Made by a program: the position numbers and the translations under genes. DNA of 64,000 bases from Magallana gigas (Eukaryota). The stretch covers positions 49,600,001-49,664,000 of the forward strand of contig NC_088858.1 in assembly GCF_963853765.1 (NCBI RefSeq), in the 5' to 3' direction. The notes beneath the pieces are model-generated. The model had not been told where the DNA came from. It saw only the letters and a program-made list of their open reading frames with translations, and did no database searches. Positions 3,421 to 10,308 of this stretch are shown here, piece after piece; positions within the stretch are counted from its first letter, which is position 1, and every line of letters starts with the position of its first letter.

Positions 3421-3627
3421 GCTTAAGATTAGATCAATTGTACAATATTTGTGACCATTACAGTTTTCCACTTTCAAAGACAATTAAAAATGAGTCAATT
3501 ATATCCATTAAACAACAATTTATTTTTTAAATATGCATGTTTGTATCAATATTCAAGAACCAATCTGTGTATTTCTGTTTAATAGATATACTGACAAGTA
3601 TTATTTTTCTTTCAACAGAGTCAACAT

Positions 3628-6600
3628 TTATCGATGTTGTCGACTCTTCCTTTTCTTCTTTTGTTTTGAGCGAATTTTCTTCTGAAAGACAGCACTGCTT
3701 TTTACATTACTGGGCCTAGTGTGAAATTTCTGCTTTTTCTCTCGCTTGTCATCCCTTCGCTGAGGTCTCTTCATATCTTTTTTCACCTGAGATCTGGTTA
3801 AGGATAATATTCCCCATTATCCACACATACAGTAAAACACTTTTCATGCATTTAATCAGTGATAAACTTGTTCACAGCAACATTGTTTCATGTCAATATG
3901 ATATGGTAGATGAGATACCAGGTACCGGTAATACTGTGGTTTCATCAATATTCGTTGAATACCAATTTTCGTGGATTTCGTTGTTAAGTTGATCCACGAA
4001 ATTAAATGTTCATTGAAGTTCAATTTCAACTAACATTTTGTATTGATAGGATCATTAGCCACGAAATTACGTATCCTTGAAACTGTGGATTTTTGAAAAT
4101 CCACGAAAATTGATACCCACGAAAATTAATGAAACCATAGTATTTATTTTAAGTTGTGTTATTAATAATACAATAGACATTAGCTCTGAGGAGCTATTTT
4201 CCGACTTCATAATACCATAACATGTAAATACAAATTATACAATTTCAATCTTACACTAGTGACTACGGTTCTAAAAACATAAATACAAACGCAAAACAAG
4301 GAAGCTTAAAGACAGTAAATACCACAATAATTCTGACATCCTGGATTAAACCTGTTTAGAAAATTTAGCTACAAACGCAAGTTTCCATAGTAACTTTGTT
4401 TGAATTGATTAAGAGTAGTAATATTTCCAAATGACTCTTGCGGAGAATATCTAAGCATCTTTTAATAATGTTAACAATTACATGAAGTATTCAAATGTCT
4501 GTTCTTATTGAAAAAAGTTCATGACAATGAGACTCTTGTGATTCCTTTTTATAGCAAGTTTATAGCAACAAAAATAAAAGTTGGTTTATATGAATAATCA
4601 TCAAACAATAATGAAATTATAAGTATCATTTGAGATGCCCGGATCCAGAAAAATTTTCCAGGGGGGGGGGGGGGGGTCCGATGGTTATTTGAGTTTCCCA
4701 GGGGGGTCCAACGTATATTTTTGGTAATTTTATAATGTAATTTAAAGAAATTTGAATTTTGCAGAGGGGTCCGGACCCCCCTAGCCCCCCCCCTTCTAGA
4801 TCCGCGCATGTTTGAAATGATCTAAAAAATGTGTGATCACAATAACAAAGGATATTTTCTTTTCTTTTTGGGGATTTTCCAGGCAATACTCTACGCGAGC
4901 TTTACGTCCCGACAATTCTGTGCCTTTTAGTTTCATTGCCAGACCCACAGAATCCTTTGACTGAAAGAAAAAACACCTTAATGATGTACAATTAAAGGTC
5001 AACAAACATTAATGTACAAAAATAAAATTCACATAATTCTATGCTATTAAATTTGTTATATAGTATGTCACCTTTCCTTTGTACTGAAAACAAGATGATA
5101 TCATAACTGGTTTTGACATTTACAAGCGTTTACTAATAATCAGTTCACAGGCTTTAAGTTGCATGCTGCTTTTCACTTGGAAATTTGATATTTAATGAGG
5201 TAATTGGCTGAAATGTTTATAATATTTTACCTTAAATGTTACATAACAGATTCCCTTTCCAACTCCTGACTTGCTGTCTCGAATGACTCGAACATTTCTG
5301 ATTTTTCCACAACTTTCAAAATGACTTCTCACATCCTCTTCCTTTATATCTTTAATACAATATACATTATTTATTTTCAACTTTTGAAATAATGTCTATG
5401 ATTAAATCAGCAGAGAAAAGGGAGGTTTTTTTTACCTAAAGGAAGATTTCCAACAAAAATTGAGCGCTTGAAGTCTGTCTACAAACAAAGTAGAAAAGAA
5501 CAAGTATTATGTATTATCCTGGAAAGTCTGATTTTACGCAAATGTTTCATCCGGATTATTCCATTGATTTCCCATGGCAGGACTTACCTTTGGATCATGA
5601 TTGGACATATCTACACGTATGTGAAAGCTCTTAACGAGTTTTCCATTCCTGTAAAGCAGAAATTTTACAAAATTTGTGTCAATCAACTCACAAACAAAAC
5701 TTTATTTCAACAATCAAAATGGGCCTAAGATATTTATGCCACATATTTTGACGATTTTTAATAAAAATACAAAATACCTGTGAAATAAGTGCAATTAAAA
5801 TTGATGAAAGGGATATTAATTCCAAAAATATCTTCATTGACACTTTATCATTATTCACTCAGAAATATTCACATGAACAAAAACAGATTTCTTATGGAGA
5901 TTTATAACAGGAAATGTTTACATGTTTTCTCTATTTGGAAGTCACTCGGAATCCCCTGCACAATTTTTCAACTTTATCATCCGAGTCTGTTGCAATACAA
6001 AATTCTCGTAGACATCACTTTTTTAGCAGTGTATTAAAACCTGACAAGCTAGAGGGGGCATTTCCAAAGAGAAATCTAAGGATTTTTTCATACTATTAAA
6101 TGGACATAATTTGATTCCTGAGGTACCGTATTCATAAATTTTGGCATAAATATCTTGGGACAGACTACTGTACAGTTCTGTATAACATATGCTTTTCAGT
6201 AAAAAGAAGGTATTGGGTTGTTTGGAAGACTCTGGAATATACTATTTCTTTCACAAATATTGAAACGCTGAATGAACCCTCTTGGCCACTCACATCTTGA
6301 GTGCTTTCTGAGCACTCTCCTCCTCCTTGAAGCAGACATAAGCACAGATGTTGTCTCTCTCCGGATGAAAGTCCTTCCTACAGAGATCAAAACAAAGTCA
6401 TTATCTATACATATCATATCACAATTCTGGTATGAACACTGTTGATATTCTTTTTCAAAAAATAAGAACTGTAAACAGACTTTAAGAAATATAATCACAT
6501 GTGAGAAAATTTTGTGAGGTTTCCAAGATTGTCCTTGTAACGAACATTTCTCACAGCGAAGTAGTTCTTAAATAAAATTTGTATATGTCAAAGTTTATCT

Positions 6601-9600
6601 TGATAGACTTACAAAAATAAGTCACAGCAAACCAGTTGATCACTGGCCAATCACATATAGCAGTTAGTTTACAGTGGCATTTCAATGTACATGTAAGTAG
6701 TACTACATATATACTACATGAATATGTATACTGTAGAAGCAGAAATATTCGTTGAGGATTTAATTTCTTTATTTTCGTTGGCAGTAAAAATCAACGAAAT
6801 TGAATCCATAGCAAATTTTAAACCCAAGGATTAATAAATACTGAGTTGATACACGATACATTTTAGAGATTATGATATGACGAAATTAAATGCCAACAAA
6901 ATTTTATTTGGTTTAAAAACAACAAAATTTTGACCCAACGAAAATATGTGCTACTACAGTAGGTAAACAAATACTCACAGGATGACAGCAGCCCGTTTAG
7001 GTAACTTTGTATCTGATCTCGGCTGTTTAAAAAAGAAATTAAATTGTATGACATAAAATAACCACTACAATATTTCTAGTTATTGTTTATATTTAGCCTC
7101 TTTTATCTGTAAAAAAACAACTGAAAGAGAAAAATTAAACATTTACATACCACACATCGAAGTCTGACAGTCTCAATGGATCCAAACTTCCTAAACAACT
7201 TGTGAAGTTCCTGAAGAAGAATAATAAAGACCATTACTGTAGCTGATGTATCAAACTTATACTTTTTCATCTATTTACCATATGTAACAAAATGCACACC
7301 ATAGTTAATAGTCCATTTATTATTTGGGTTCATGCTAGGTCTTCATACATGTGTATTCATAGTGACGTTTTTATTTAATGTTAAAGGAGCATGTTCACAA
7401 TTTTTAAAAAAAATGCTATTTTTCCCATTTTTTTTATGTTAACAATATTTAACTAAGGCATTTCCAATGGTCCAAACTATCAATATCAAGTTATAAACGA
7501 TATACAAAGCTCACAAGTCTTTGTTACATAACAAAGCTGGTGACTATGCCCTTTAATACTTTGATTAAACAATTTCTACGGCTTGTATGACATTTAAATG
7601 AACTCACTTTTTTATCTGTATTTACTGGCAAGTTACCAACAAATATTGTCTTGCAGTCTTTACTTGTATCACGCTTGCTTTTTATTCCCTTTGGCTTTTC
7701 CTCTTCTTCATCAAGATCTCGCTTTTTTGTCTTCTTCTTTTGTCTGTTTTGAATTCAATCATATTTTTCTTTAGTTTATGAGTGCATGAAGTTAAAATAT
7801 GTAAAATAAAGTGATGAAATATATTTATAGGCTTTTTCATATATTGTCAAATCTTATTTTTGCATCACAAGAAATACATTTACCACATGGATCTAAAATG
7901 AACAAAAATGAAAGAAATCTTGTAAGATGCATTAAGATGGTATGAGCACCCCCATGTTGTGACGTGTTATTTATCGAAATGAACAAAAAACTTAAACGTG
8001 AATTTATAAATAGTTTTCCCCAAAACTGTCACCTTATAGCATAGCGCAGTGGTTTAGAGGTTACTCTACAAATCTCAAATCTCAAACTGAAAGTCATGAG
8101 TTTGAATCCCGCTGGGGATTTTAAGATGTGTATCTTTGCAAAAAAAAATTTTAAAAGTATTTTTTGGTTCAATATTGTAAAATCTGAAAATTCTAAACTG
8201 AAGAAAGTACTCTACTTATAATGTTCTTTAATCCATGTTAATATCAACAAATGTCCCATACCACCTAATCTTTATCAATACATGTACTTACTTTTCCATC
8301 AAGAGTGACTCGTGAACTATTCCTGGAGGAGGACAGAAACCGGCCATTTTATCAACACGTTTATCCTCTCCTTCACTTTCATCATCATCCATGTCTTCTT
8401 CTGCTTGTGTTTTGGCCATTTCCTTCAAATGAATTACAGAGGCATGATTACTGTTTGGTCTGAAAATGTTCCAATGTTATTTTTATATATGGTAAGGTTA
8501 AACTAATCTACATAATGTTGACTAAATCCTGTGATTTTTAGTTATCTGTGTTCCAGACAATGACAAATTTTCAAACAATAAGTACTTATGTATGTACATG
8601 GTCAACCTCAAGCTACCTTTCTGTCAGACATTAAAATTCACACAGACTTTTATAATACATAATTCTGTACATAAAGTTAACCACTGTTAAAATCCAAGGT
8701 ATTTAAAAATCACTGTAGCATTAACAAGTTTATTATGATAACAGTCAATAATTCATTTTTTGTTTAAACCTTTGAATTTTTCACTGTCTCTTGGACATCA
8801 TTACTTGGACTAGAGTTCTCTTTATTTTTCTTCTTCTTTGATTTTCTAAAAACATAAAAACAATTATCACACTTTCTTAAAATATGCAAGATATAAGACA
8901 CCTATAATATCAATAATTGATTGAATTCTATTTAACAAATACCTATATTAATAGGGGGTTTACATGTATACATTCCAATTTCTCAGAAAATAGAGTAAAG
9001 ATTGAGAACTAACAGAGTTTTAAAAAAAAATGTGACATCTGAATGCCAAAGATTCAAAGATTAATGTATTCAACTTGATCTTACTTTTTGGAGCCTTTTG
9101 TTATATTCCTTGCACTTCCACTTGTCTCCTCAGACAACATTGATGCTGCATCAGATCTTTCTTGGTTCTAAAAAAGGCATGTGCATATATAAAGTTTAAA
9201 TCTTTGTTAAGTCTTGCATCTCTTTATCATTAAAATTTACGAATAACTTTTTAAAAATTCTCACCTGTGTCGATGTGACTTTGTCTCCAAATAATGCTGC
9301 AAGTTTTTGTTTTTCTGATGCCGTGGCTGTATCTGACAAGTTCAGCTTTTTGGTCATCAACTTTGCTAATTTTGCACTGTCTGATTTGGGTGATTTCCTC
9401 TTCCTCTTGTTAGACAAGGTGGCCAATTTAATATCACCTTGGTTTTGTACTGTCACTGACGCTATAGCTTCAGCTTTGGGACATGAATTCTCCTTATTTT
9501 TCTTCTTTTTTGATTTCCTATATTAAAGCATAATAGTAATACAAATCTCATTTACATCAAACATTTTTTAAAAAAGATTGTCATATTATAAATGTATGCT

Positions 9601-10308
9601 TAGTTCTCATAATTTAAATTTTTTTTTGGCTATTTTGCTTCAGCTGTTGATCAACTAAAAGGGTTATGACTTTCCATCTATCTTTAAAAAAATGATAATT
9701 ACAGCATTCCTAAAAGTTCATGTTAATGTATTACTGAAAAGAAATAACTTTAACTCAAAAAAAGACAAAATTTTACTTTTTATTAGAAACCCCTTGTAAG
9801 TTTCCTTCAGATCCTCTTGTCTCTGATGCTGACACAGTTTCACCAATTCCTTTTTGATTCTATGAAGAAGATGGTATAATACATATAATTTATAAATATT
9901 AATAATACATGTAACAGGTGTAGAAATATTTGAGTTCTGACAAGTTCATTTATTTGCGATTAAAACAAAAAAGCAAAATATATACATTGTACAAGTAGTG
10001 AAAAATATTTGAAATAACAAGTTGTAAATCTATTTGCTATTATTAAAAATGATTAAAAGCACCTGTGTTTCTGGTTTGGATGATGACAATGTAACTTTAG
10101 CTCCAAACAGTGCGGCAAGTTTTTCTTTTTCTGATTTAGATGTTGATCTTTTAGCTGTTTTACTTGTGTCTGACAAATTCAACTTTTTGTCAATAAGCTT
10201 TGCTAATTTTTTACTCTCTAGCTTGGATATTTTCCTTTTTTTCTTGTTAGACAAGTCTGAAGTTATATCACCCTTAGTTGACATCTTATGCTTTTTTCTT
10301 GATACCAT
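3628..10308 (-). CDS. RBM34: RNA-binding protein 34 (nucleolar two-RRM protein, Nop12-like), about 577 aa
   Basis: Hand-spliced exons in 5'->3' order: 10063-10308 (ATG), 9777-9859, 9265-9517, 9085-9167, 8770-8845, 8607-8620 (candidate microexon), 8292-8459, 7608-7743, 7151-7210, 6979-7022, 6294-6377, 5588-5648, 5436-5478, 5231-5349, 4856-4960, 3628-3786 (TAA). Total 1734 nt, in frame. RRM1: KTIFVGNLP...FGSIETVRLR...DFHPERDNICAYVCFKEEESAQKAL. RRM2: RSIFVGNLP...CGKIRNVRVIRDSKSGVGKGICYVTF. Lys-rich N- and C-termini. Probable 5'UTR exon ends at 11295; AATAAA (minus strand) at 3519-3524. Confidence 0.9.
3932..4142. mobile_element. TA-flanked MITE (Tc1/mariner-like)
   Basis: Ends TACTGTGGTTTCAT... 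and ...ATGAAACCATAGTA; internal repeated CCACGAAAWT motifs. Confidence 0.8.
4635..4809. mobile_element. Non-autonomous DNA element with about 16-bp inverted ends and G-tracts
   Basis: Ends ATGCCCGGATCCAGAA and TTCTAGATCCGCGCAT; long G run at 4661-4676; lies in the last RBM34 intron. Confidence 0.7.
6729..6961. mobile_element. TA-flanked MITE
   Basis: Ends TACTGTAGAAGCA... and ...TGCTACTACAGTA; internal ACGAAAT motifs similar to 3932-4142. Confidence 0.75.
7385..7552. mobile_element. TTAA-flanked non-autonomous transposon (Kolobok/piggyBac-type)
   Basis: TTAA|AGGAGCATGTTCAC ... GTGACTATGCCCT|TTAA. Confidence 0.65.
7935..8266. mobile_element. TTAA-type (Kolobok-like) non-autonomous element with an internal tRNA-like segment
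   Basis: Ends AGATGGTATGAGCAC and TGTCCCATACCACCT; TAGCGCAGTGG...GTTTGAATCCC at about 8043-8110; related to 12760-12958. Confidence 0.55.

What the first reader, a model, noticed from the sequence alone, without database searches (positions are those of the whole stretch)
3787..4855. Apparent U12-type (minor spliceosome) intron with non-canonical AT-AG ends in RBM34
Seen on the minus strand: the RRM2 exon ends ...KEKK, followed by ATATCCTTTG, the U12 5' splice-site consensus. No good GT donor is nearby. At the far end, TCCTTAAC (U12 branch-point consensus, plus-strand 3797-3804) is followed 10 nt later by CAG|GTGAAA, and there is no AC within a normal distance. Joining these sites is phase 0 and gives an open, basic C-terminal tail to the stop at 3628. 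Established: U12 introns are mostly GT-AG or AT-AC, and AT-AG hybrids are rare and usually mis-annotated. Two MITEs sit inside this intron.
Basis: partly seen in the sequence, partly recalled or inferred. Interest (0 to 1): 0.75.

Follow-up and report, generated by a model that had tools for sequence, protein, structure and literature searches.

The report
Oyster RBM34 minor-spliceosome AT-AG intron
The last intron of the oyster RBM34 gene is a real minor-spliceosome (U12-type) intron with the rare AT-AG ends; RNA reads confirm the junction, and the same old intron is GT-AG in mussel, scallop and snail and AT-AC in a starfish, so this is a well-documented new example of a known rarity.

Summary
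Confirmed. On the minus strand the exon ends at 4856. The intron (4855..3787, 1069 nt) begins ATATCCTTTG. TCCTTAAC sits 11-12 nt before the terminal AG.

RNA evidence: the joint 3786|4856 (AT..AG, no positional ambiguity) occurs in transcript contigs of three RNA runs and in 5 raw polyA reads of a fourth, from four studies. All nine other joints of the gene are GT-AG.

The genome carries full-length U11, U12, U4atac and U6atac genes with canonical recognition boxes.

The gene is RBM34/Nop12: 15 exons, 560 aa, two RRMs.

The only intron after RRM2 is a canonical U12 intron in four other animals:
- GT-AG in Mytilus, Mizuhopecten and Biomphalaria.
- AT-AC in the starfish Patiria.
- It is U2-like in a chiton and absent in a fish.

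The A at +1 is not an assembly slip. About 122 public contigs crossing the border read ATA. A sister oyster's 327-nt intron, which lacks both repeats, has the same AT...AG ends.

Most likely an ancestral U12 GT-AG intron took a G>A change at +1 in the oyster lineage.

AT-AG U12 introns are already known (11 in human), so this is a new member of a known kind. Dependence on the minor spliceosome is inferred, not shown.

The parts
4856..4960 (-). Penultimate coding exon (105 nt, second half of RRM2, ...ENPQKEKK); phase 0 at both ends
   Evidence: Joints 4960|5231 and 3786|4856; translation
4847..4855 (-). U12-type 5' splice site ATATCCTTT (intron +1 to +9), with A instead of G at +1
   Evidence: UCCUUU is complementary to the oyster U11 5' end (AAAAGGG) and to the U6atac AAAGGA box
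3787..4855 (-). The AT-AG intron, 1069 nt
   Evidence: skips 1069, ends CT..AT on the + strand, 'both' = 0; contigs in X1, X6 and X12 plus 5 raw reads in X20
4630..4810 (.). Older dispersed repeat (MITE-like, inverted G-run and C-run arms) inside the intron; absent from the sister oyster's intron
   Evidence: Inverted repeats I4, I6 and I8; 40 scored copies at 78-87% identity out of 1694 candidates; L008 lacks window 4810-4638
3930..4144 (.). Young high-copy MITE (about 213 bp, about 49-nt terminal inverted repeats, TA on both flanks) inside the intron; absent from the sister oyster's intron
   Evidence: I1; 40 scored copies at 96-98% out of 2695 candidates; RNA contig depth in the thousands and loose ends at 3930-3932 and 4142; L008 lacks window 4446-3895
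3797..3804 (-). U12 branch-point sequence TCCTTAAC; its two A residues lie 11 and 12 nt from the last intron base
   Evidence: complementary to GUAAGGA in the oyster U12 snRNA
3787..3789 (-). 3' splice site CAG (terminal AG preceded by C), with no polypyrimidine tract
3628..3786 (-). Last coding exon: 52-aa basic tail plus stop; the 3' UTR runs on to about 3468-3501
   Evidence: contig pieces, table 8

Best explanation
This is a genuine U12-type (minor-spliceosome) intron of the rare AT-AG subtype, and it is the last intron of the oyster RBM34/Nop12 gene. Inferred mechanism: U11 pairs with UCCUUU at +4 to +9 of the 5' splice site. U12 pairs with UCCUUAAC and bulges a branch adenosine 11-12 nt from the 3' end. 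U6atac then replaces U11, and the first CAG at the permitted distance is used as the acceptor. The intron is old. It is the only intron behind RRM2 in bilaterian RBM34, and it is a canonical U12 intron in mussel, scallop and snail (GT-AG) and in a starfish (AT-AC). The oyster form most likely arose by a single G>A change at +1 of a GT-AG U12 intron. The change is fixed across at least two oyster lineages and the intron is still spliced at exactly the ancestral junction. Shown: the junction, the motifs, the snRNA genes, the orthologues and the fixed A. Inferred: dependence on the minor spliceosome, which A is the branch point, and the direction of the change.
For: Junction. The joint 3786|4856 appears in one contig each of X1, X6 and X12 (flanks of 86-111 nt) and in 5 raw polyA reads with 5 different starts in X20. 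These come from four studies, and 'both' = 0. The 1801-nt X12 contig carries this joint together with GT-AG joints of the same mRNA. Reading frame: one search gives a 560-aa ORF. Motifs and spacing; the 11-13 nt optimum and the lack of a polypyrimidine tract are from PMC3584512. Machinery: U12 126 bits, U11 98, U6atac 90, U4atac 81, all full length, with canonical boxes. Orthologues: Mytilus gaaaaa|GTATCCTTTTTT...TTCCTTAACTTTTAAACAG|; Mizuhopecten GTATCCTTTTGT...TTCCTTAACAATGTTCAG|; Biomphalaria GTATCCTTTGCA...ACCTTAACTTTGACCCAG|; Patiria ATATCCTTTGTA...CCCTTAACCACGTTGAAC|. All four are phase 0, and all seven upstream introns fall in identical alignment columns and phases. Fixed A: eight ORF variants from about 122 public contigs read KEKK-ISF, that is ATA TCC TTT. 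The sister-oyster contig L008 carries the complete 327-nt intron ATATCCTTTG...TATCCTTAACCAGATCTCAG|GTG. Sister-species cDNAs keep the same join. A C just before the AG is typical of animal AT-AG minor introns (bioRxiv 10.1101/2022.09.24.509304).
Against: No experiment or read type here shows which spliceosome removes the intron. No lariat or branch point was mapped. Read depth is too low to measure splicing efficiency or retention (about 2x in the raw run). The intron position differs by 2-9 alignment columns between species, inside a low-complexity linker of variable length, so orthology rests on it being the only intron behind RRM2 and of U12 type everywhere. The direction of change rests on parsimony over five taxa. 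The classical view is that switching runs from AT-AC to GT-AG (PMC2831892), which would make AT-AG a retained intermediate instead. Fifteen weaker joints were not displayed.
Confidence: 0.9

Rival explanations
1. The AT-AG state is not derived from GT-AG. It is a retained intermediate of the classical AT-AC to GT-AG switch: the ancestor had AT-AC as in the starfish, an early mollusc changed the 3' C to G, and mussel, scallop and snail each changed A to G at +1 independently.
For: The starfish orthologue is AT-AC. The literature treats AT-AG as a viable intermediate and treats switching as mostly AT-AC to GT-AG (PMC1557818; PMC2831892).
Against: It needs three independent A>G changes against one G>A change on the sampled taxa. 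Taxon sampling is thin, so this is not excluded.
Confidence: 0.25
2. The intron is removed by the major (U2) spliceosome as a non-canonical AT-AG intron, and the U12-like motifs are relics.
For: U2-type introns with AT ends exist (PMC1557818, PMC2831892).
Against: The 5' site has C at +5 and a perfect ATATCCTTT, not the G at +5 that PMC2831892 reports for U2-type AT-AC introns. There is no polypyrimidine tract. There is a perfect branch box at the U12 optimum. These signals are conserved in the sister oyster despite 10-15% divergence and a three-fold change in intron length. The chiton shows what a U2-converted version looks like.
Confidence: 0.04
3. The A at +1 is an assembly error or a rare allele, the expressed allele has G, and the intron is an ordinary GT-AG U12 intron.
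For: Spliced reads cannot show the intron's first base.
Against: All eight ORF variants from about 122 independent public contigs that cross the border read ATA and none reads GTA. Two divergent contigs, L008 and L009, also read ATATCCTTTG.
Confidence: 0.02
4. The joint is a library or alignment artefact such as template switching or mis-mapping.
For: None beyond the non-canonical ends.
Against: There is no shared sequence at the two sides ('both' = 0). Four runs from four studies show it, with 5 distinct read starts, on the same strand as the gene's GT-AG joints. The join is in frame. The same join is found in sister-species cDNAs.
Confidence: 0.01

Closest known systems
Non-canonical U12-type AT-AG introns of mammals (for example human XPO4, ACTR10, SCN10A, NUP210, USP21; Sheth et al. 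2006, PMC1557818)
   Same: They have the U12 5' splice site and branch box with AT...AG ends. They differ by one nucleotide from a canonical subtype. Several have a GT-AG orthologue in another species, as here.
   Different: This one lies in a mollusc and in a gene (RBM34) that no paper found here links with minor introns. The sampled orthologues of this one intron show AT-AC, GT-AG and AT-AG forms, a U2-like form and loss.
A-type (AT-AN) minor introns that depend on CENATAC/CCDC84 (de Wolf et al. 2021, PMC8280824)
   Same: It has AT at the 5' end and a variable last nucleotide. The oyster genome carries a CCDC84 homologue.
   Different: CENATAC dependence and elevated retention were shown in human cells. 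Nothing here tests them in oyster.
Canonical U12 GT-AG intron at the same place in Mytilus, Mizuhopecten and Biomphalaria RBM34
   Same: Same gene, same place behind RRM2, phase 0, the same TATCCTTT and CCTTAAC boxes, and 10-11 nt from the second A of the branch box to the 3' end (11 nt in oyster on the same count).
   Different: G at +1 instead of A.
Subtype switching and U12-to-U2 conversion (Burge et al. 1998 as cited in PMC2831892; Lin et al. 2010)
   Same: Orthologous U12 introns differ in their end dinucleotides. A GT-AG form has converted to a U2-like form (chiton). The intron has been lost (fish).
   Different: On parsimony the oyster step runs from GT-AG towards AT, opposite to the usually assumed direction.

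Membership tests
U12-type (minor spliceosome) intron | 5' splice site [A/G]TATCCTT at +1 to +8 | tested here: met
   ATATCCTTT at 4855-4847
U12-type (minor spliceosome) intron | Branch-point box TCCTTAAC close to the 3' end (optimum 11-13 nt) | tested here: met
   3804-3797; its A residues are 11 and 12 nt from the last intron base; the optimum is from PMC3584512
U12-type (minor spliceosome) intron | No distinct polypyrimidine tract before the 3' splice site | tested here: met
   The sequence upstream of the branch box is GGATAATGGGGAATATTA; only CAGATCTCAG lies between the box and the exon
U12-type (minor spliceosome) intron | The host genome encodes U11, U12, U4atac and U6atac | tested here: met
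   all above the Rfam cut-offs and full length; recognition boxes intact
U12-type (minor spliceosome) intron | The orthologous intron is U12-type in other species | tested here: met
   Mytilus, Mizuhopecten, Biomphalaria and Patiria
U12-type (minor spliceosome) intron | Removal depends on the minor spliceosome | not testable with these tools
   Needs knock-down, blocking or in-vitro splicing
AT-AG (A-type, AT-AN) non-canonical U12 subtype | The ends AT...AG are actually used in RNA | tested here: met
   joint 3786|4856, ends CT..AT on the + strand, no ambiguity, 4 runs
AT-AG (A-type, AT-AN) non-canonical U12 subtype | The A at +1 is the real genomic base | tested here: met
   About 122 contigs and two divergent oyster contigs read ATA
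AT-AG (A-type, AT-AN) non-canonical U12 subtype | Reliance on CENATAC and raised basal retention | not testable with these tools
   Only the presence of a CCDC84 homologue was shown; depth is too low to measure retention
U2-type intron with AT ends | U2-like 5' site (G at +5) and a polypyrimidine tract | tested here: not met
   C at +5 and no pyrimidine tract
RBM34 / Nop12 protein family | Two RRM domains with a basic N-terminal region and C-terminal tail; best matches named RBM34 | tested here: met
   Near-identical oyster protein P0005 hits PF00076 (RRM_1) twice, once weakly. Homologues are named RNA-binding protein 34 or nucleolar protein 12. Seven intron positions are shared with mollusc, starfish and fish RBM34

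The most novel reading that the evidence does not exclude
The oyster intron records a reversal of the usual direction of U12 subtype switching, from GT-AG back to an A-type 5' end. The supposedly disfavoured AT-AG hybrid has been fixed and spliced accurately across oyster speciation. Among the taxa sampled here, RBM34 would then show AT-AC, GT-AG and AT-AG forms of one orthologous U12 intron, plus U2 conversion and loss. That would make it a natural test bed for how first and last nucleotide pairing constrains the minor spliceosome.
Probability: 0.55. Interest if true: 0.45.

Novelty: new member of a known kind. Interest (0 to 1): 0.35.

Why it matters
Gene predictors miss AT-AG minor introns or 'correct' them, so an RNA-verified case fixes the RBM34 gene model in oysters. 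A retained intron would end the protein after KEKK plus 19 intron-encoded residues, without its basic tail. For evolution, the case is a clean natural series for one orthologous U12 intron, with the hybrid state stable across oyster species. That bears on whether AT-AG is only a short-lived, poorly spliced intermediate. It does not change what is known about the minor spliceosome.

Tried and rejected
- The spliced 560-aa protein could not be passed to the search tools, because it has no reference and is too long to type. I seeded with one exon instead, which gave P0005.
- The look-up of encoding contigs found nothing for P0071 or for Littorina P0184.
- The Owenia locus held only the first two exons, so it says nothing about the last intron.
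- My first junction script, based on tblastn, failed on short exons. I replaced it with an exact-match splicer.
- The global MAFFT alignment of the two oyster introns was poor. I used the BLAST blocks instead.
- Counting the motifs in the window shows that neither is enriched on its own, so frequency is no argument; position is.
- Paper searches for RBM34 with 'minor intron' or 'U12' gave nothing relevant.
- Rejected readings: the nearby GT donors, an intervening exon, and read-through as the main product. No listed joint supports them, and the unique parts of the intron have near-zero depth.

Full report
**What is in the sequence**

Read on the minus strand, an exon ends ...CCCCAAAAAGAAAAGAAA at 4856.
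- The next bases are ATATCCTTTG (4855-4846).
- TCCTTAAC lies at 3804-3797. It is followed by CAGATCTCAG, which ends at 3787, and then by GTGAAAAAAGAT.
- The two A residues of the box are 11 and 12 nt from the last intron base. This falls within the 11-13 nt optimum quoted for U12 introns, which also lack a polypyrimidine tract (PMC3584512). None is present here.
- The next AC downstream of the box is about 36 nt away.
- Joining 4856 to 3786 is phase 0 and gives a 52-residue basic tail ending at the TAA at 3630-3628.

**Chance**

Neither motif is enriched in the window. RTATCCTTT occurs 4 times against 2.1 expected, and TCCTTAAC twice against 2.7. The argument is therefore positional. One copy of each sits exactly at the two ends of an intron that RNA defines independently. 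From the background rates the joint chance is about 1e-9 (my arithmetic).

**RNA evidence**

The runs that hold the stretch are labelled as oyster. The joint from 3786 to 4856 skips 1069 bases, with ends CT..AT on the plus strand, which is AT..AG for the gene.
- It is present in one contig each of three RNA runs (X1, X6, X12), with flanks of 86-111 nt.
- It is present in 5 raw polyA reads with 5 different starts (X20).
- These are four different studies, and 'both' = 0, so the cut cannot be slid.
- All nine other joints of the gene are CT..AC, which is GT-AG.
- An 1801-nt contig of X12 carries the AT-AG joint together with GT-AG joints of the same mRNA.
- The raw junction reads lie in the same orientation as those of the GT-AG joints.
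- No listed joint uses the nearby GTTATT or GTGATC, and there is no intervening exon. Fifteen weaker joints were not displayed.
- The unique parts of the intron (4191-4560) have depth 0-1.5 against 3-46 for the exons.
- Coverage is too low to quantify retention.

**The gene**

From the joints and the sequence I built a 15-exon CDS of 1683 nt, giving 560 aa.
- A one-exon seed recovered P0005, a 552-aa protein from a cDNA contig of a sister oyster. It is 90.6% identical and has the same C-terminal join, KEKK|MKK.
- P0005 hits PF00076 (RRM_1) twice, once weakly.
- Its homologues are named RNA-binding protein 34, or nucleolar protein 12 in fungi and plants.

The gene is RBM34.

**The machinery**

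The window's genome (564 Mb) has one full-length gene each for:
- U12 (126 bits)
- U11 (98 bits)
- U6atac (90 bits)
- U4atac (81 bits)

All four are above the Rfam cut-offs. Their recognition boxes are canonical:
- The U11 5' end, AAAAGGG, is complementary to UCCUUU at +4 to +9.
- The U6atac AAAGGA box is complementary to the same six bases.
- U12 GUAAGGA is complementary to UCCUUA-(A)-C.

A CCDC84/CENATAC homologue is present as four colinear exon matches. In human cells this factor promotes splicing of A-type (AT-AN) minor introns (PMC8280824). Its role in oyster is only an inference.

**Orthologues**

I mapped annotated RBM34 proteins exactly onto their own genomic loci. The seven introns upstream of the one in question fall in the same alignment column and phase in every species in which they are present; one of them is missing in Patiria.

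The last intron is the only one behind RRM2. It lies in a short low-complexity linker, within 2-9 columns, and is phase 0 in all but the chiton.

| Species | 5' end | 3' end | Type |
|---|---|---|---|
| Mytilus galloprovincialis | GTATCCTTTTTT | TTCCTTAACTTTTAAACAG | U12 GT-AG |
| Mizuhopecten yessoensis | GTATCCTTTTGT | TTCCTTAACAATGTTCAG | U12 GT-AG |
| Biomphalaria pfeifferi | GTATCCTTTGCA | ACCTTAACTTTGACCCAG | U12 GT-AG |
| Patiria miniata (starfish) | ATATCCTTTGTA | CCCTTAACCACGTTGAAC | U12 AT-AC |
| Liolophura (chiton) | GTATTTCTGATA | no branch box | U2-like, shifted by one base (phase 1) |
| Astyanax (fish) | none | none | intron absent |

This is therefore an old U12 intron of RBM34. 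Because gain of U12 introns is regarded as extremely rare (PMC3584512), independent origins are unlikely despite the small offsets in position.

**Is the A real and fixed?**

Gene calls on public genomic contigs produce small ORFs that run from the exon into the intron.
- All eight variants found, from about 122 contigs, read KEKK-ISF, which is ATA TCC TTT. None reads GTA.
- Contig L008, from a sister oyster (85-93% identity to the window over the aligned blocks), holds the whole intron. It is only 327 nt, reads ATATCCTTTG...TATCCTTAACCAGATCTCAG|GTG, and lacks both repeats.
- L009, another divergent copy, also starts ATATCCTTTG.

The hybrid ends are thus conserved while the body of the intron changed three-fold in length.

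**The repeats**
- 3930-4144 is a young MITE. It has about 49-nt terminal inverted repeats and TA on both flanks. All 40 scored copies are 96-98% identical, out of 2695 candidates. It is heavily represented in RNA contigs.
- 4630-4810 belongs to an older family, with copies at 78-87% identity out of 1694 candidates.

**Interpretation**

The best reading is a genuine U12-type intron of the AT-AG subtype (confidence 0.9).

On parsimony over the sampled taxa it arose by G>A at +1 of a GT-AG U12 intron in the oyster lineage. The alternative is a retained intermediate of an AT-AC to GT-AG switch. That needs three parallel changes and cannot be excluded with this sampling.

The remaining rivals are each poorly supported: U2-type splicing, an assembly error, and a library artefact.

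**Comparison with what is known**
- AT-AG is the commonest non-canonical U12 subtype in Sheth et al. 2006: 11 in human, 8 in mouse and 1 in Arabidopsis. Human and mouse AT-AG/GT-AG pairs exist. The authors suggest these introns are 'viable intermediates of subtype switching' (PMC1557818).
- Turunen et al. call such hybrids disfavoured and possibly poorly spliced (PMC3584512).
- Larue and Roy note a C before the AG in animal AT-AG minor introns, as here.
- Lin et al. describe subtype switching, U12-to-U2 conversion from GT-AG forms, and frequent loss (PMC2831892).
- No paper found here links RBM34 with a minor intron.

**Verdict**

This is a new member of a known kind and is of modest interest. 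Its main value is a corrected gene model and a tidy evolutionary series for one U12 intron.

Noticed in passing
window 8770-10308 (minus strand): The N-terminal part of RBM34 contains an in-frame tandem duplication of an exon pair (336 nt; exons 9777-9859 with 9265-9517, against 9085-9167 with 8770-8845 and part of exon 1). The duplicated block is also present in the sister-oyster cDNA proteins P0005 (552 aa) and P0174 (572 aa). Other molluscs have proteins of 400-460 aa.
   Followed up: partly
window 3930-4144: A very young MITE family: all 40 scored genomic copies are 96-98% identical, out of about 2700 candidates, with TA flanks. RNA contig depth is in the thousands, so the family is either widely co-transcribed or itself transcribed.
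   Followed up: partly
window 16389-16397 (minus strand): A second exact ATATCCTTT. An open frame precedes it (…[22 protein letters not shown] in phase 1), and a TTCTTAAC box lies 669 nt downstream with no AG or AC at the usual distance. It may be another minor intron in the neighbouring gene, or chance.
   Followed up: no
L010 (Liolophura sinensis RBM34 locus), last intron: The chiton has a U2-like GT-AG intron one base off the position of the bivalve U12 intron (phase 1 instead of 0). Its 5' end is GTATTTCTG and it has no branch box. It looks like a U12-to-U2 conversion with a one-base slide.
   Followed up: partly
L012 (Owenia fusiformis): The annotated RBM34 gene range holds only exons 1-2 of the product, with another gene nested inside it. 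The rest of the product starts again beyond the locus end. This may be a mis-join in the annotation or a very long intron.
   Followed up: no
window 4961-5133: One RNA contig of run X1 (record 5, 4933-5133) runs from the exon into the upstream GT-AG intron, so that run contains some unspliced RNA or DNA. Intron depth in contig-based runs should not be read as retention.
   Followed up: no
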